A stretch of DNA of 64,000 nucleotides from Octopus sinensis. Lineage: Eukaryota. Numbering within the stretch: the first letter of the stretch is position 1; each line of letters opens with the position of its first letter. This document shows positions 9,147-64,000 of this stretch, in pieces. Made by a program: the position numbers and the translations under genes. The stretch lies in NCBI RefSeq assembly GCF_006345805.1, contig NC_042998.1:40300001-40364000 (forward strand), read 5' to 3'. The notes under the pieces were generated by a model. It ran no database searches. It was not told the origin of the DNA and saw nothing but the letters and a program-made list of their open reading frames with translations.

Positions 9147-9512
9147 ACATTCGAGCTTTGGTGTTGGAGAAGACTTTTACGGATTCCATGGACAGTGAGG
9201 CTCACCAATGGAGAAGTTCTTAAGCAGATCAGGCCGAAAATGTCGCTAGAAGCTAGGATCACCAAGCATAGATTGGCATATTTTGGTCATATTATGCGGA
9301 GAAAATCCCTGGAGAAGGACATCATGCTCGGAATGGTCAGTGGCAAGAGAGGAAGAGGCCGACCAAGAACCCACTGGCTTGACACCATCAAGAGTGATAC
9401 CGGAATGGACATAGCCAATCTGAAAGAAGTGGCCCAGGATAGAACTGACTGGAGGACACTGATCCATCGAGTAACCGAGAGTCGACTTCGACTGAGCGGA
9501 TAGATAGATAGT
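9147..9512 (+). mobile_element. 5'-truncated RTE (BovB-like) LINE, ORF2 C-terminus
   Basis: FELWCWRRLLRIPWTVRLTNGEVL...YFGHIMRRKSLEKDIMLGMVSGKRGRGRPRTHWLD...AQDRTDWRTLIHRVTESRLRLSG*, then a (GATA)n tail. Confidence 0.9.
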
Positions 9513-10149: not shown

Positions 10150-10563
10150 ATATTGGTTTAAAATTTTGGCATAAGGCCACCAATTTCAGGGGAACGGGTA
10201 AATTGATTACATTGACACTTGTTTCATCAACCCTGAATGGGATGAAAGGTAAAGTCAAGCTTGACAAAATTTGAACTCAAAATGTAAAGATGGATAAAAT
10301 GCTGCTAAGTATTTTGCCCAGCATGCTAATGATTCTTATTTCTTTATTGCCCACAAGGGGCTAAACATAAAGGGGACAAGAACAGACAAAGGGATTAAGT
10401 CGATTACATCGACCCCAGTGCGTAACTGGTACTTGATTTATCAACCCCGAAAGGATGAAAGGTAAAGTCGGCCTCAGTGGAATTTGAACTCAGAACGTAA
10501 CGGCAGATGAAACATAGCTAAGCGTTTCACCCGGTGTGCTAACGATTCTGCCAGCTCGTTACC
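10150..10563 (-). mobile_element. Two tandem tRNA-derived Nin/Deu-domain SINE copies just downstream of the AGPAT stop
   Basis: The 10334-10563 copy reads CGAGCTGGCAGAATCGTTAGC...GAGTTCAAATTCC (A/B boxes)...CCTTTCATCCTTTCGGGGTTGATAAATCAAGTACCAG...CTGGGGTCGATGTAATCG, with an A-rich tail; a more degraded copy occupies 10150-10333. Confidence 0.75.
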
Positions 10564-10664
10564 ACTGCATACAAACTACCTTGTTAGTTATTCTAATTTT
10601 GTTCTGTATGTGATGAAAAGAGTGTTATGTGTGTTCTAACCTGTAAAGTAACAATAATACCTAC

Positions 10665-11149
10665 TCATTTTTCTGCTTCTTTGAAAGAATTTGCTTTTAC
10701 AAGTTCCTGTGCTTCTTTAACTGTCTTTGCCACAATTTTCTGAGCTAATTCTTCTGTATTTTCAGTTTGTTTACTTTTATTTATTTTCCCCATGGTAACA
10801 TGTGCATCAGCAACTGTTGCTTCTCTAATTCTGTCAGCATGTAGTTTCTGTTCTTCCTTTGTGCTAACATCTGGACTGATTGTTTCTACATTAGTCTCAG
10901 CAGACTCTTCTTCAATCCTTTCTAAGACTCCTAATCCTCCAGAATCAGTCAGTGAACTTGGTGACACTGATAAGGGTCGTTTCTCCTTTGAAGTATTTGA
11001 ACTGCCGAAAACAATAGGTGAAACTTCATGGGAAGTTTTGTAATAGACATTCTCCATCTGAATTTGGATTTTTTCACATAAATCATTGACATCTGTTGAT
11101 TTCAGACCAGTTGTTGGGGTCGGAGGTAGGATAGTAATGATAAATTTAC
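10665..11149 (-). CDS. AGPAT1/2: AGPAT1/2-like, terminal coding exon with long C-terminal extension
   Basis: Acceptor AG at 11151-11150; phase 1 matches exon 5. Encodes (G)KFIITILPPTPTTGLKSTDVNDLCEKIQIQMENVYYKTS (typical AGPAT C-terminal region), then ~100 extra residues to TGA at 10667-10665. Confidence 0.9.
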
Positions 11150-12285: not shown

Positions 12286-12358
12286 CAGGCTCCAATTTTT
12301 TTTCGCTTTTGCTATAAAATGGTTGAAATGACGAAAAGATAACTGGTACGATTGGAAC
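12286..12358 (-). CDS. AGPAT1/2: AGPAT1/2-like, exon 5 equivalent
   Basis: ttttattttcAG acceptor, GTAATT donor, 73 nt (same as human AGPAT2 exon 5). VPIVPVIFSSFQPFYSKSEKKLEP(G), with motif IV (IVPV). Absent from the ORF track. Confidence 0.94.
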
Positions 12359-12708: not shown

Positions 12709-13257
12709 AAGACCTCACCTGGAATTTGCATCACCAGTCTGGAACCCCTATCTTGCCCAGGATATCAATCGTCTGGAAGCTGTTCAGCGACCGTGCAACC
12801 AAAAGAATACCCTCCATCAGGCATTTGCCATATTCTGAATGCCTTACTTCCCTGGGCATGGACACATTGAAACTCCGACTTCTGGCAGCTGATTTGGCAG
12901 ACACCCATAAAATTATCAACCATCTTACAAACAATAACTCTGAGCACCTTTTCAAACTCCACCCGTCTAACACCCGTGGACATATTTACAAAGTCAGAAA
13001 ACAGCACAGTTCCCATGACTTTAGGAAACATTTTTTCACGCTGAGAGTTGCTGAAGCATGGAACAAACTGCCGGCATCAGTTGTTAGTTGTCGGAGCACT
13101 GCATCCTTCAAAACTTCCATGCTTTCTGAGATTCGCCAGACTCATACATTGTTTGCTTTCCAGACACTTGTACATTACTGCATGTACTTTATACGCACTT
13201 TCTGACAAGTTGTGGTGCACCTGAGCACTGTATACAATAATTTCATTATTATTATTT
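12709..13257 (+). mobile_element. 5'-truncated CR1/L2-like LINE 3' end
   Basis: PHLEFASPVWNPYLAQDINRLEAVQ / RATKRIPSIRHLPYSECLTSLGMDTLKLRLLAADL...TRGHIYKV...FFTLRVAEAWNKLP, ending in an (ATT)n tail. Confidence 0.85.
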
Positions 13258-15371: not shown

Positions 15372-16797
15372 TATGTGCCGGTGGCACATGAACATCGAAC
15401 CAAATATCAATGGAAACAGTAGTTGTGATACCTGTGCAGGTGACACATAAAAAGCACCATCCGAACAGCCGTTGCCAGTGCAACCTCCGCTGGCTTCTGT
15501 GCCGGTGGCACATAAAAAGCACCATCCGAGCGTGGCCGACGCCAGCACCGCCTCGACTGGCTTCTGGGCCGGTGGCACATAAAAAGCACCAACCGATCGT
15601 GGGATCCCGGAACATCTCGCTGTGCTTGAGGAGACCTGTTGAGTCAAGTGCATGTACATTGAACTTCGAACCAAATATCAATGGAAACAGTAGTTGTGAT
15701 ACCTGTGCCGGTGACACATAAAAAGCACCATCCGAACGTGGCCATTGCCAGTGCAGCCTCCACTGGCTTCTGTACCGGTGGCAATAAAAAGCACCATCCG
15801 AACAGCTTCTGTGCCGGTGGCACATAAAAAACACCATCCGAACGTGGCCGATGCCAGCACCCCCCCGACTGGCTTCTGTGCCGGTGACACATAAAAAGCA
15901 CCATCCGAACATGGCCGACGCCAGCACCGCCTTGACTGGCTTCTGTGCTGGTGGCACATAAAAAGCACCAACCAATCGTGGGATCCCGGAACATCTCGCT
16001 GTGCTTGAGGAGACCTGTTGAGTCAAGTGCATGTACATGTTGAACATCGAACCAAATATCAATGGAAACAGTAGCTGTGATACCTGTGCCGGTGACACAT
16101 AAAAAGCACCATCCGAACGTGACCGTTGCCAGTGCAGCCTCCACTGGCTTCTGTGCCGGTGGCACATAAAAAGCACCATCTGAACGTGACCGATGCCAAC
16201 CCTGCCTCGAATGGCTTCTGTGCCGGTGGCACATGAACATCGAACCAAATATCAATGGAAACAGTAGCTGTGATACCTGTGCCGGTGACACATAAAAAGC
16301 ACCATCCCAATGTGACCGTTGCCAGTGCAGCCTCCACTGGCTTCTGTGCCGGTGGCACATAAAAAGCACCATCCGAACGTGACCGATGCCAACCCCGCCT
16401 CGAATGGCTTCTGTGCCGGTGGCACATAAAAAGCACCATCCGAACGTGACCGATGCCAACCCCGCTTCGAATGGCTTCTGTGCTGGTGGCACATATAAAG
16501 CACCATCCGAATGTGGCCGATGCCAGCACCGCCCCGACTGGCTTCTGTGCCGGTGGCACATAAAAAGCACCATCCGAACGTGGCCGATGCCAGACCCCTC
16601 TGGCACCTGTGCAGGTGGCACGTAAAAAGCACCCACTACACTCGCGGAGTGGTTGGCGTTAGGAAGGGCATCCAGCTGTAGAAACACTGCCAGATCAGAC
16701 TGGAGCCTGGGGCAGCCCCTGGCTCCCCAGACCCCGGTCGAACCGTCCAACCCGTGCTAGCGCGGAAAACGGACGTTAAACGATGATGATGATGATG
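15372..16797 (+). repeat. Higher-order minisatellite built from RTE 3'-UTR modules, ending in an intact RTE tail (16625-16797)
   Basis: Roughly 20 copies of TGTGCCGGTG(G/A)CACATAAAAAGCACCATCCGAACGTG..GCCAG..CTGGC, interspersed with recurring blocks (AACATCGAACCAAATATCAATGGAAACAGTAG; CTGTGCTTGAGGAGACCTGTTGAGTCAAGTG), followed by the (GAT)n tail. Confidence 0.88.
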
Positions 16798-17797: not shown

Positions 17798-17893
17798 CTG
17801 GGACTGAACTGCCAAATGGAAAACACCCTTTTTGAATGGTAACATGCGTCCATCACGATTTCGAGTACCCTCTGGGAATGTGAATAAGCGAAT
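17798..17893 (-). CDS. AGPAT1/2: AGPAT1/2-like, exon 4 equivalent
   Basis: ttctcAG acceptor, GTATGC donor, 96 nt, after a 113-nt intron. [32 protein letters not shown], with motif III (FPEGTR). Absent from the ORF track. Confidence 0.95.
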
Positions 17894-18006: not shown

Positions 18007-18182
18007 CTGTTTTTTTGTAATAATTTCTGCTGTATCCACCAGCGTTTTAAGTGCTTTTTCATGATTTAATCGATCAATAAAGATTGTGCCACAAAGCCAG
18101 GCAGCTACACCAAATACACCAGTATACAAGAGTTCTTTTTTGGCTAAACTAGTGCAGTAATCTGGCCATATTTCCATCATAC
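18007..18182 (-). CDS. AGPAT1/2: AGPAT1/2-like, exon 3 equivalent
   Basis: AG/GT bounded, 176 nt (same length as human AGPAT2 exon 3). (G)MMEIWPDYCTSLAKKELLYTGVFGVAAWLCGTIFIDRLNHEKALKTLVDTAEIITKKQ, with motif II (FIDR). Confidence 0.95.
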
Positions 18183-62536: not shown

Positions 62537-64000
62537 GCAAATAAGAAAATGGAGGAGAACAATAGGTGGTTCATCAACTTTTGGACATTAAAATGTTAAC
62601 TTTTTAATTTATTAAACTGATAATTATAATAACATACATACATATAGCATATTATTCTTTACATATAAGATATAAGATATAAAATATAGTAATATATAAG
62701 GATACCAGTAATTATTATAAAAAACATGAATATAAATTGGTAAAATAACTTACAGTTGTTTCAGCCAATAGATAAAAATACCTCATTCTACCTATATTAC
62801 TCAAGTGGATATGTGCATGCATGTACACACACACACACGTGTATACAAACATACAAGATCAAGACAAAAAGACACGGATACATACAGATGTACCTTTATA
62901 CATACACAAGAGGCATAATTTAATATCCTATTAGTTTTACTTACAAGTCTTTGTTCAACCTTAGACTATAATAGAAGATACTCGCAAAAGTGGCAGCACT
63001 GTAGGAATGAAACTTAAACCACATGGTAGAGAAGTGAACTTAACTATACAGCCATACCTAAACACAAACATACACACATGTATGTGAACTTATGTGTATA
63101 AGCATATGTATGTACGTGTATGTATATGTGTGTATATAAAAATGTGTACGTGAATGTATAGATGTATGGGTGTGTATCTATAGATGTGCGCATTTATATA
63201 TATATTTGGATGGAATATACACACATACAGACACAAAAGAGTTAGACTCAAGCACTAGATGAAAGTATTTAAATGGAAACCAAAGAAAGATTTTCATTAA
63301 ATATCCAAATGAGAGGAAATGCCAAGTATAATTTCAAAAGTTCAGATTTGACAACCACAGTTACCAATCAAAATTTTTTAATTTCATTAAAATACATAAA
63401 AAAAAAAATTTTTAAAAAGCGTATGATTTCCAACAGTCAAATGTTTATCTACATAGATAAAAGTTTTGAGTTCAAACATCATTAGTGGTGTCATTCACTT
63501 TATGCAAGTTTGTTTCTTAGAAAAGGATGGGATTTGAAGGAGACTTGGTTAGTATTACTAGCAGAACGATGTATAGGCAAGGTGCCTAGAAAAGCATATT
63601 AAAGTAGAAAAGAGAAGATAACAAATGTGGCATCATTTATTTGATGCAAGTTTCATCATCATTATTACTTTTAATGTCCACTTTTCCATGTTTGCAGGGA
63701 TTGGATGGAATTTGTTGAAGTAGATTTTCTAAGGCTGGATGTCCTTCCTGTCACCAATTCTCACTTGTTTTCAAGTATGGTAATATTTTCATATGTGTTT
63801 ACCAGATGTGTTTTCATAGAAAATTGTAAATGAAAGATACTGATTGCATGATGGTGGCACTTGTTTTACAACTATCACATGAAATCAAGGCAAATAGATA
63901 ATAACACACACACACGTACAAATATACATATGGCAGGTATATTTCAGTTTCCCCCTGGTTGGCCTGGGGCTATAGCAGAAAAAATTTGCCCAAAGTGCCA

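What the first reader, a model, noticed from the sequence alone, without database searches (positions are those of the whole stretch)
10668..11020. AGPAT C-terminal extension with an AKAP-like helix and a PP2A-B56-type docking motif
Seen: the last exon stays open for ~100 codons beyond where vertebrate AGPAT1/2 end, giving an acidic, Ser-rich tail. It contains LERIEE (10908-10925) and TEELAQKIVAKTVKEAQELV (about 10698-10757). Established: LxxIxE is the PP2A-B56 docking consensus, and PKA-RII anchoring helices follow the pattern of AKAP-IS (LAKQIVDNAIQQA), which aligns residue for residue with LAQKIVAKTVKEA. A basic KRPLS and SP sites sit just upstream. Inference: this enzyme may double as a membrane kinase/phosphatase scaffold coupling phosphatidic-acid synthesis to cAMP signalling, which I do not know to be described for AGPAT1/2.
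Basis: partly seen in the sequence, partly recalled or inferred. Interest (0 to 1): 0.75.

Follow-up and report, generated by a model that had tools for sequence, protein, structure and literature searches.

The report
Cephalopod-only docking tail on AGPAT
The octopus enzyme that makes phosphatidic acid carries a 118-residue tail found only in cephalopods. Its two best-conserved patches look like docking sites for the phosphatase PP2A-B56 and, less convincingly, for protein kinase A, but no binding has been tested.

Summary
Window 10668-11021 (minus strand) encodes the last 118 residues of Octopus sinensis AGPAT-alpha. Five GT-AG exons in the window splice to a product identical to residues 63-384 of XP_029658374.1.

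The tail is already annotated, and cuttlefish-type orthologues carry it in intronless transcript contigs. It is absent from every non-cephalopod mollusc orthologue retrieved (271-288 aa) and from 1.84 billion representative proteins.

Across eight cephalopod tails:
- LERIEEES is the longest invariant block. Argonauta changes only the free x position.
- It lies in predicted disorder and meets the published determinants of a strong B56 LxxIxE motif.
- The distal helix keeps an invariant A..IV..TV..A ridge, and all its substitutions fall at x positions of the consensus.

Weaknesses of the kinase-anchor reading:
- The helix matches the published RII-anchoring consensus at only 4 of 7 positions, and AKAP-IS at 5 of 13.
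- It has an invariant Thr where AKAPs have Ala.
- It is one of two duplicated helices, and the other decays in octopods.
- KRPLS is not conserved as a PKA site.

Verdict: a real, selected, cephalopod-restricted regulatory tail. B56 docking is plausible (about 0.5), PKA anchoring speculative (about 0.25). No binding was tested.

The parts
10668..11149 (-). Last coding exon of AGPAT-alpha (residues G224-K384). It encodes the end of the acyltransferase domain and the whole tail in one exon. The stop codon TGA is at 10665-10667.
   Evidence: AG acceptor, and the spliced product is identical to P0177. The cuttlefish-type genomic ORFs P0046 and P0175 show the same exon architecture.
10668..11021 (-). 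The cephalopod-specific C-terminal tail, residues S267-K384 (118 aa).
   Evidence: Absent from non-cephalopod orthologues. A tail profile finds only cephalopod proteins among 1.84e9 representatives. dN/dS is 0.31 against another octopod.
10872..11021 (-). Ser-rich and acidic linker predicted to be disordered (tail residues 1-50), containing the elements below.
   Evidence: AF2 pLDDT is below 50-55 both in the full-length model and in the tail-only model.
10977..10988 (-). Basic cluster KEKR (residues 278-281; ERR in the cuttlefish-type sequences), 18-21 residues upstream of the LxxIxE motif. It is a possible B56 'basic patch'. The overlapping KRPLS is not conserved as a PKA-type site.
   Evidence: E13 and R15 are invariant. 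Basic-patch rule: PMC10970375. Alignment.
10902..10925 (-). LERIEEES (residues 299-306), a candidate PP2A-B56 LxxIxE docking motif with acidic P2 and P7 and Ser at P8.
   Evidence: Coordinates. Only fully invariant 8-mer of the tail. Argonauta has LESIEEES, changed only at the free P3 position. Motif rules.
10863..10886 (-). Conserved ET(I/L)SP(D/A/E)(V/I)(S/G) block (residues 312-319) with an invariant Ser-Pro just downstream of the docking motif. It is a candidate phospho-site.
   Evidence: Alignments.
10770..10868 (-). Predicted helix A (tail residues 52-84), a paralogous copy of helix B. It is intact in cuttlefish-type species (LADKIVEQTVADAQETI), degenerate in Octopus (V to R, hydrophobic moment 0.12) and largely lost in Argonauta.
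   Evidence: AF2. Internal-repeat test: 0 of 5000 shuffles reach the observed score in P0002 and P0049. Argonauta sequence.
10671..10757 (-). Predicted helix B (tail residues 89-117). Its core LAQKIVAKTVKEAQELV lies at 10698-10748 (residues 358-374). It is an AKAP-like amphipathic docking helix.
   Evidence: AF2 pLDDT is about 90-94. Hydrophobic moment is 0.54, against 0.44 for AKAP-IS. Invariant positions 1, 2, 5, 6, 9, 10, 12, 13 and 14 lie on the hydrophobic face.
12286..12358 (-). Penultimate coding exon (VPIVPVIFSSFQPFYSKSEKKLEP-).
17798..17893 (-). Exon carrying acyltransferase motif III, FPEGTR.
18007..18182 (-). Exon encoding MMEIWPD...ITKKQ.
32674..32810 (-). Exon carrying acyltransferase motif I, NHQSSLD. 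Exon 1 (the transmembrane helices) lies outside the window.

Best explanation
The region encodes a C-terminal regulatory tail on the ER lysophosphatidic-acid acyltransferase AGPAT-alpha of Octopus sinensis. The tail is restricted to cephalopods (found in octopods and cuttlefish-type species) and probably faces the cytosol.

Shown:
- The tail is an in-exon 3' extension of the ancestral last exon.
- It consists of a disordered Ser/acid-rich linker of about 50 residues followed by two helices that arose by internal duplication.
- It is under purifying selection.

Inferred, in decreasing confidence:
1. The tail is a protein-docking module.
2. The invariant LERIEEES in the linker is an LxxIxE short linear motif. 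It recruits PP2A-B56 to the enzyme, where the phosphatase would act on nearby phospho-sites (the Ser-rich linker, the invariant SP site) or on neighbouring lipid-synthesis proteins.
3. The distal helix B presents an invariant small-aliphatic ridge (A359, I362, V363, T366, V367, A370) to a partner with a helical groove. The docking/dimerisation domain of a PKA regulatory subunit is the leading candidate but is not demonstrated.

If both dockings are real, the tail would work like mAKAP, which holds PKA and PP2A-B56delta together so that PKA activates the phosphatase locally.
For: Gene model and identity:
- The spliced exons equal XP_029658374.1 residues 63-384. Pfam Acyltransferase scores E = 1.9e-33.

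Expression:
- Ten intronless transcript contigs were read (L001-L010; the index lists the P0002 sequence in 93 blocks; L001 translated). Further transcript-derived ORFs P0168, P0169, P0170 and P0049 also join the catalytic domain to the full tail.

Lineage restriction:
- More than 20 gastropod, bivalve, brachiopod and nemertean orthologues are 271-288 aa with no tail.
- An exhaustive HMMER profile search finds only cephalopod tails.

Selection:
- Tail dN/dS is 0.31, against 0.09 for the adjacent core.
- Identity between Octopus and cuttlefish-type tails is about 50%.

B56 motif:
- It is the only invariant 8-mer. The Argonauta substitution hits only P3.
- It fulfils P1 = L, P4 = I, P6 = E, acidic P2 and P7, and Ser at P8 (PMC10970375).
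- It lies in predicted disorder.
- The strong form occurs in 0.2% of shuffles.

Helix B:
- pLDDT is about 90 and the hydrophobic moment is comparable to AKAP-IS and Ht31.
- The invariant positions largely coincide with the published contact positions 2, 5, 6, 9, 10, 13, 14 (PMC12083921) and cluster on the hydrophobic face (868 of 20000 permutations).
- All substitutions fall at x positions of LxxxAxxIVxxAIxxA (PMC3682517).

Topology and precedent:
- The AGPAT2 C-terminus is cytosolic (PMC12749901).
- mAKAP binds both PKA and PP2A-B56delta (PMC10988123).
- AKAP1-PKA regulates GPAT1, the preceding enzyme of the pathway (PMC12062205).
Against: - No binding data of any kind exist. Short-motif matches have high false-positive rates, and plain L..I.E appears in 5% of shuffled tails.
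- Helix B matches the RII consensus at only 4 of 7 positions identically and AKAP-IS at 5 of 13.
- It lacks the leading Leu, and it has an invariant Thr where AKAPs have a small aliphatic residue and an invariant Gln at contact position 14.
- A commonly used 12-residue AKAP search pattern (from my own knowledge) fails at that Thr.
- No AKAP-related Pfam family is hit at E <= 10, and there is no sequence or fold match in the PDB.
- The two long helices could pack on each other or self-associate, which would bury the ridge.
- Helix A, which has the same ridge, has decayed in octopods, so tandem anchoring is not maintained.
- The basic cluster lies 18-21 residues upstream of the motif, not within the 15 or so described.
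- KRPLS is not conserved as a basophilic kinase site.
- Cytosolic orientation is inferred from a mammalian paralogue only.
Confidence: 0.4

Rival explanations
1. The two helices form a self-association or intramolecular module, such as a helical hairpin or coiled coil. This module would oligomerise the acyltransferase or fold back on it. LERIEEES would be conserved as an acidic, phospho-regulated element unrelated to B56. Under this reading the resemblance to AKAP and B56 motifs is coincidental.
For: - AF2 predicts two long adjacent helices of 29-33 residues with high pLDDT.
- They are duplicates sharing LA..IV..TV..AQE.I.
- The invariant Thr, Glu and Gln (T366, E369, Q371) suggest a specific interface different from the all-aliphatic AKAP ridge.
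- There is a weak sub-threshold hit to the L7/L12 dimerisation helix, E = 0.013.
Against: - Helix A loses its amphipathicity in Octopus (hydrophobic moment 0.12) and is largely lost in Argonauta, while helix B stays intact. That is hard to reconcile with an obligatory A-B hairpin.
- The tail-only model has pTM 0.27 and no fold match.
- This reading does not explain why the single change in LERIEEES falls on the one position that is free in the B56 motif.
Confidence: 0.25
2. Helix B docks a different partner. This could be a non-PKA member of the RIIa/DPY-30 docking-domain superfamily or an unrelated helix-binding protein. B56 recruitment could still hold.
For: - The docking/dimerisation fold is ancient and is used by proteins other than PKA (PMC8339350, abstract).
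- The helix deviates from the vertebrate RII consensus at conserved positions.
- According to PMC12083921, most AKAP families expanded in vertebrates.
Against: No candidate partner could be examined here. The ridge spacing is still the classical AKAP spacing.
Confidence: 0.17
3. Helix B is a membrane-binding or lipid-droplet-binding amphipathic helix that positions the enzyme on particular membranes.
For: It is amphipathic (hydrophobic moment 0.5-0.66) and belongs to a membrane-bound lipid enzyme.
Against: - The hydrophobic face is narrow and made of Ala, Val, Ile and Thr. The 13-residue core has no aromatic residue and Leu only at its first position.
- Mean hydrophobicity is about 0, and net charge varies from +2 to -2 between species.
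- Conservation extends to the polar residues E369 and Q371.
- These features are typical of protein-protein helices, not lipid-binding helices (last point from my own knowledge).
Confidence: 0.07
4. The tail is a functionless read-through extension and the motif matches are chance.
For: - The tail is lineage-specific.
- It has low complexity in part.
- It evolves faster than the core (dN/dS 0.31 against 0.09).
Against: - The tail is retained with about 50% identity, including invariant blocks, between octopods and cuttlefish-type cephalopods. That split is of the order of 250-300 million years (own knowledge).
- dN/dS is clearly below 1.
- The frame is open in all eight species.
Confidence: 0.04

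Closest known systems
AGPAT1/AGPAT2 (LPAAT alpha/beta), PlsC-type 1-acyl-sn-glycerol-3-phosphate acyltransferases, Pfam PF01553
   Same: - The catalytic domain is the same, with NHQSSLD and FPEGTR motifs and an N-terminal membrane anchor.
- It is 40-56% identical to other animal orthologues, which sources name 'AGPAT alpha'.
- A confident PlsC-like core is predicted.
   Different: It has 118 residues after the catalytic domain, against about 10-25 in other molluscs and in vertebrates. The extension has no detectable homologue outside cephalopods.
PP2A-B56 LxxIxE short linear motifs (for example the BubR1 KARD motif LSPIIEDS, RacGAP1, KIF4A)
   Same: - The core is L-x-x-I-x-E with acidic P2 and P7 and a phosphorylatable Ser at P8.
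- It is located in a disordered segment with a basic cluster upstream and an SP site downstream.
   Different: - Binding is untested.
- The basic cluster is 18-21 residues upstream rather than within about 15.
- The host is an ER lipid enzyme. The literature searches found no AGPAT reported with such a motif.
A-kinase anchoring helices (AKAP-IS, Ht31/AKAP-Lbc, AKAP18, D-AKAP2); consensus LxxxAxxIVxxAIxxA
   Same: - It is an 18-residue amphipathic helix with aliphatic pairs every four residues.
- A, I, V and A are identical to the consensus, and acidic residues flank it.
- Its hydrophobic moment and mean hydrophobicity resemble those of AKAP-IS and Ht31.
   Different: - Thr replaces the consensus Ala, Val replaces Ile, and there is no leading Leu.
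- Gln occupies position 14.
- Identity to AKAP-IS is only 5 of 13.
- There is no family-model hit.
- RII binding is untested.
mAKAP (AKAP6) signalosome, which holds both PKA and PP2A-B56delta
   Same: It shares the proposed logic: one polypeptide brings PKA and a B56-type PP2A together at an internal membrane (PMC10988123).
   Different: - There is no sequence relationship.
- mAKAP is a large dedicated scaffold, whereas here the putative sites sit on a metabolic enzyme.
- The octopus case is entirely inferential.
AKAP1-PKA control of GPAT1 in mammalian liver
   Same: Anchored PKA acts on the glycerol-3-phosphate pathway that makes LPA and PA (PMC12062205).
   Different: Anchoring there is in trans, by a separate mitochondrial AKAP acting on the preceding enzyme. 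It is not an anchoring helix built into the acyltransferase.

Membership tests
AGPAT/LPLAT acyltransferases (PF01553) | Motif I, NHxxxxD | tested here: met
   NHQSSLD at 32681-32701, minus strand.
AGPAT/LPLAT acyltransferases (PF01553) | Motif III, (F)PEGTR | tested here: met
   FPEGTR at 17861-17878.
AGPAT/LPLAT acyltransferases (PF01553) | Family profile match above the curated cut-off | tested here: met
   PF01553 scores 115.5 bits against a cut-off of 23, E = 1.9e-33, on P0048. Orthologues are named AGPAT alpha.
AGPAT/LPLAT acyltransferases (PF01553) | LPA acyltransferase activity | not testable with these tools
   Needs an enzyme assay.
PP2A-B56 LxxIxE docking motif | [LMFI]xx[ILV]xE, with L preferred at P1, I preferred at P4 and E obligatory at P6 | tested here: met
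   L299, I302 and E304 are invariant in eight cephalopod sequences. Rule taken from PMC10970375.
PP2A-B56 LxxIxE docking motif | Acidic or phosphorylatable residues at P2, P7, P8 and P9 | tested here: met
   E at P2, E at P7 and S at P8 are invariant. P9 varies.
PP2A-B56 LxxIxE docking motif | Located in an intrinsically disordered, accessible region | tested here: met
   AF2 pLDDT is 34-55 over residues 271-320 in two independent runs. This is a prediction only.
PP2A-B56 LxxIxE docking motif | Basic patch within about 15 residues N-terminal to the motif | tested here: inconclusive
   A conserved KR/RR pair lies 18-21 residues upstream.
PP2A-B56 LxxIxE docking motif | Same compartment as B56 (cytosol or nucleus) | not tested
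   Inferred from the cytosolic C-terminus of mouse AGPAT2 (PMC12749901). Not examined for the octopus protein.
PP2A-B56 LxxIxE docking motif | Direct binding to the B56 pocket that is lost on mutating P1, P4 or P6 | not testable with these tools
   Needs a pull-down, ITC or a complex model. B56 could not be submitted to the structure tool.
A-kinase anchoring proteins (RII-binding helix) | Amphipathic alpha-helix of 14-18 residues | tested here: met
   The AF2 helix spans residues 355-383 with pLDDT up to 94. Hydrophobic moment is 0.54.
A-kinase anchoring proteins (RII-binding helix) | Aliphatic ridge matching LxxxAxxIVxxAIxxA, with hydrophobic residues at positions 2, 5, 6, 9, 10, 13, 14 and 17 | tested here: inconclusive
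   - 4 of 7 consensus residues are identical, 2 are conservative (T for A, V for I) and 1 is mismatched.
- Position 14 is Gln.
- Identity to AKAP-IS is 5 of 13.
A-kinase anchoring proteins (RII-binding helix) | Match to a curated AKAP or RII-binding family model | tested here: not met
   No AKAP-related Pfam family is reported at E <= 10. Such very short models are easily missed by HMMER filters, so this counts for little.
A-kinase anchoring proteins (RII-binding helix) | Binding to the R-subunit docking/dimerisation domain, competed by Ht31 or AKAP-IS and abolished by helix-breaking prolines | not testable with these tools
   This is the defining biochemical criterion and no computation available here addresses it.

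The most novel reading that the evidence does not exclude
In cephalopods that carry this tail, the housekeeping ER enzyme AGPAT-alpha has itself become an A-kinase anchoring protein. It would co-anchor PKA through helix B and PP2A-B56 through LERIEEES, giving phosphatidic-acid synthesis a built-in cAMP-controlled kinase/phosphatase switch. This arrangement is not described for any AGPAT, and it arose by extension of the last exon followed by internal duplication of the anchoring helix.
Probability: 0.13. Interest if true: 0.7.

Novelty: new variant of a known kind. Interest (0 to 1): 0.45.

Why it matters
AGPAT1/2-type enzymes are usually treated as constitutive, and little is known about how signalling controls them after translation. 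This case is a lineage-specific tail under selection whose best-conserved elements read as phosphatase and possibly kinase docking sites. It would be a clean natural example of a metabolic enzyme acquiring signalling inputs through new short linear motifs. It would also point to local phospho-control of phosphatidic-acid synthesis in cephalopods, animals with very large, lipid-rich nervous systems. The hypothesis is cheap to test, because B56 and the PKA docking domain are highly conserved and peptides suffice. If the tests are negative, the tail is still a conserved cephalopod novelty whose partner is unknown.

Tried and rejected
- **Exon 1:** tblastn with the O. bimaculoides N-terminus finds nothing in the window. 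The gene spans 72.5 kb in the assembly, so exon 1 lies beyond position 64000.
- **Homologues of the tail outside cephalopods:** a word-indexed search with a tail alignment and an exhaustive HMMER profile search of 1.84e9 representatives returned only cephalopod proteins.
- **Pfam scan of the tail:** only sub-threshold hits appeared (Hydantoinase_A, L7/L12 dimerisation helix, several DUFs). I rejected these as chance.
- **PDB by sequence with helix B and by fold with the tail model:** no matches.
- **Tails of other long AGPAT-alpha proteins (rotifers, mosquitoes, midges):** they are unrelated in sequence and carry neither motif, so this is not a widespread convergent feature in that sample.
- **The 12-residue AKAP search pattern I know from the literature:** I could not find it in the paper library, so it is used only as own knowledge. 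The helix fails it at one position.
- **A tail-less isoform:** the Acanthosepion pharaonis annotated model P0167 ends in another frame and skips the tail. All transcript-derived ORFs of the same cluster, including ones with pharaonis-type residues, keep the tail. I therefore treat it as an annotation artefact, though a minor splice form is not excluded.
- **Rfam and tRNA scans around the exon:** nothing relevant.

Full report
**What is at the coordinates**

The finding lies on the minus strand. The open frame runs from an AG acceptor (first exon base 11149) to TGA at 10665-10667. A pattern scan places LERIEE at 10908-10925, LAQKIVAK at 10725-10748 and KRPLS at 10968-10982. It also finds the acyltransferase motifs NHQSSLD (32681-32701) and FPEGTR (17861-17878) further upstream on the same strand.

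Five exons, all with GT-AG introns, lie at 32674-32810, 18007-18182, 17798-17893, 12286-12358 and 10668-11149. They splice to a product identical to residues 63-384 of P0177, which is XP_029658374.1, '1-acyl-sn-glycerol-3-phosphate acyltransferase alpha' of Octopus sinensis/O. vulgaris, 384 aa. The window is 100% identical over 54.8 kb to O. sinensis chromosome record CM016860.1. There the gene spans 72.5 kb, so exon 1 (the transmembrane helices) lies outside the window. The gene model, tail included, is already in RefSeq.

**Is the tail real and expressed?**

The tail (S267-K384, window 10668-11021) is encoded in the same exon as the last strand and helix of the catalytic domain, so it cannot be dropped by exon skipping.

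Ten contigs of about 2 kb from cuttlefish-type Logan assemblies were read, and the index lists the same protein in 93 blocks. They carry an intronless 393-codon ORF in which the catalytic domain runs straight into the tail (L001-L010). Further transcript-derived ORFs show the same arrangement: P0168 (45 contigs), P0169 (13), P0170 (8) and P0049 (29).

One annotated model from Acanthosepion pharaonis (P0167) skips the tail through a splice inside the exon. Transcripts with pharaonis-type residues keep the tail, so I regard that model as an artefact or at most a minor isoform.

**How widespread is it?**

Using the catalytic domain as query, the nearest non-cephalopod orthologues are all 271-288 aa. 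They include Gigantopelta, Haliotis, Patella, Lottia, Pomacea, Mercenaria, Mactra, Dreissena, Solemya, Mytilus, Lingula and Tubulanus. They stop 10-15 residues after the conserved ...QTSLE segment.

A profile of the tail searched exhaustively against 1.84 billion representative proteins returns only cephalopod sequences. The word-indexed search gives the same result. Longer AGPAT-alpha proteins from rotifers and dipterans have unrelated tails without either motif.

The tail is therefore a cephalopod novelty, seen here in octopods and cuttlefish-type species, and not a mollusc feature. Nautilus could not be examined.

**Conservation**

Eight tails are available:
- O. sinensis/vulgaris
- O. bimaculoides
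- an unnamed octopod
- Argonauta hians
- four cuttlefish-type sequences, one of whose clusters contains the A. pharaonis protein

Against another octopod, tail dN/dS is 0.31, compared with 0.09 for the adjacent catalytic part. Octopus and cuttlefish-type tails are about 50% identical.

Within the tail, LERIEEES is the only fully invariant 8-mer among the first seven sequences. Argonauta has LESIEEES, changing only the third position.

The second island is E(E/Q)LA(Q/H)xIVxxTVxEAQ. Counting L358 as position 1, positions 1, 2, 5, 6, 9, 10, 12, 13 and 14 are invariant in all eight. They cluster on the face of the hydrophobic moment: direction 95 degrees against 108 degrees, with 868 of 20000 permutations reaching the observed clustering.

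A third island, ADxIxxxTVxxA, is a paralogue of the second. In cuttlefish-type sequences the two helices share LA..IV..TV..AQE.I (0 of 5000 shuffles reach the observed score). In Octopus a ridge Val has become Arg (hydrophobic moment 0.12), and in Argonauta the segment is largely lost. Selection has thus kept LERIEEES and helix B while letting helix A go in octopods.

**Structure prediction**

AF2 on the full-length O. bimaculoides protein gives a confident PlsC-like core. Residues 271-320 come out disordered (pLDDT below 50), followed by helices 321-349 and 355-383 with pLDDT up to 94. The tail alone gives the same picture: residues 1-50 disordered, helices 52-84 and 89-117, pTM 0.27. It has no fold match in the PDB. 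LERIEEES therefore sits in predicted disorder, as a short linear motif should, and the AKAP-like segment is a confidently predicted helix.

**Comparison with the B56 motif**

The published rules (PMC10970375) are as follows:
- The core is [LMFI]xx[ILV]xE, with Leu preferred at P1, Ile preferred at P4 and Glu obligatory at P6.
- Binding is enhanced by acidic or phosphorylated residues at P2, P7, P8 and P9.
- Binding is also enhanced by a basic patch within about 15 residues upstream.

The octopus sequence has L1, E2, I4, E6, E7 and S8, all invariant. A conserved KR/RR pair lies 18-21 residues upstream and an invariant Ser-Pro lies downstream. Plain L..I.E arises in 5% of shuffled tails, but the acid-flanked form arises in only 0.2%. 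Together with disorder, invariance and the P3-only substitution, this makes a good candidate. I put B56 binding at about 0.5.

**Comparison with AKAP helices**

The published consensus for the aliphatic face is LxxxAxxIVxxAIxxA (PMC3682517), with contacts at positions 2, 5, 6, 9, 10, 13, 14 and 17 (PMC12083921).

Helix B gives A, I, V and A identical, T for A and V for I, and no leading Leu. Position 14 is an invariant Gln. Identity to AKAP-IS is 5 of 13, not 'residue for residue'. Hydrophobic moment and mean hydrophobicity resemble AKAP-IS and Ht31. No AKAP-related Pfam model is hit.

The invariant Thr, Glu and Gln suggest a specific interface. That could be a cephalopod R subunit, another docking-domain protein, or the sister helix. 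I put PKA anchoring at about 0.25. KRPLS is not conserved as an R-x-x-S site.

**Plausibility of the compartment and the logic**

The C-terminus of mouse AGPAT2 faces the cytosol (PMC12749901), so the tail should be accessible to cytosolic enzymes. This is an inference by homology. Co-anchoring of PKA and PP2A-B56delta on one scaffold is established for mAKAP (PMC10988123). Anchored PKA regulates GPAT1, the preceding enzyme of the pathway, through AKAP1 (PMC12062205). The searches found no paper that links an AGPAT to PKA anchoring or to an LxxIxE motif.

**Verdict**

The best-supported account is a cephalopod-specific, selected, probably cytosolic regulatory tail. Its disordered part carries a strong candidate PP2A-B56 docking motif. 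Its distal helix is a protein-docking helix with PKA RII as leading but unproven partner.

The rivals are self-association of the duplicated helices, a non-PKA partner, and membrane binding. None can be excluded without experiments. The feature is a new variant of a known enzyme and is of moderate interest until binding is shown.

Noticed in passing
window 9165-64000: The window is 100% identical to Octopus sinensis assembly GCA_006345805.1, record CM016860.1. The AGPAT-alpha gene spans 72.5 kb there, so its first coding exon lies beyond the window's right end.
   Followed up: yes
P0167 (CAE1277787.1, Acanthosepion pharaonis) versus L001: The deposited cuttlefish gene model ends ...DLCNK|KAHMQNVFQEKMTVVDKSAA. 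It splices inside the last exon into another frame and removes the whole tail. Transcript contigs of the same cluster do not support this.
   Followed up: partly
P0179 (Argonauta hians), tail region: Argonauta has lost most of helix A (the protein is 14 residues shorter overall, 370 against 384) and has LESIEEES instead of LERIEEES, while helix B is nearly unchanged. This works as a natural deletion experiment within octopods.
   Followed up: partly
P0178 (O. vulgaris CAI9718558.1): This is a second annotated isoform with a different, non-hydrophobic N-terminus replacing the first membrane helices. It could be an alternative first exon or an annotation artefact.
   Followed up: no
window about 10400-10600 (minus strand), immediately 3' of the stop codon: A tRNA-like, SINE-type repeat (ggtaacgagctggcagaatcgttagcac...gttcaaattccactgaggccgac) lies in the 3' UTR region. 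ARAGORN calls no tRNA. Its start is also present in the other octopod's contig L011.
   Followed up: partly
window 15432-16633 and 43650-44460: Intronic satellite-like arrays have a 67-bp unit (193-bp higher-order unit), about 12 copies. The two arrays are 79-89% similar to each other. They create long spurious ORFs.
   Followed up: partly
window 44577-46639 (minus), 12726-13205 (plus), 9195-9503 (plus): ORF fragments resembling the reverse transcriptase and C-terminal parts of LINE retrotransposons lie inside the introns and downstream of the gene.
   Followed up: no
window 34383-38860 and 46948-47361: There are several kilobases of TA/CA-rich microsatellite and low-complexity sequence in the large intron. 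These give long 'YIYIYI' pseudo-ORFs on both strands.
   Followed up: no
window 10221-10248 (minus): A sub-threshold Rfam hit to CRISPR-DR15 (24.6 bits against a gathering score of 36, E = 0.024). This is almost certainly chance in an animal genome.
   Followed up: no
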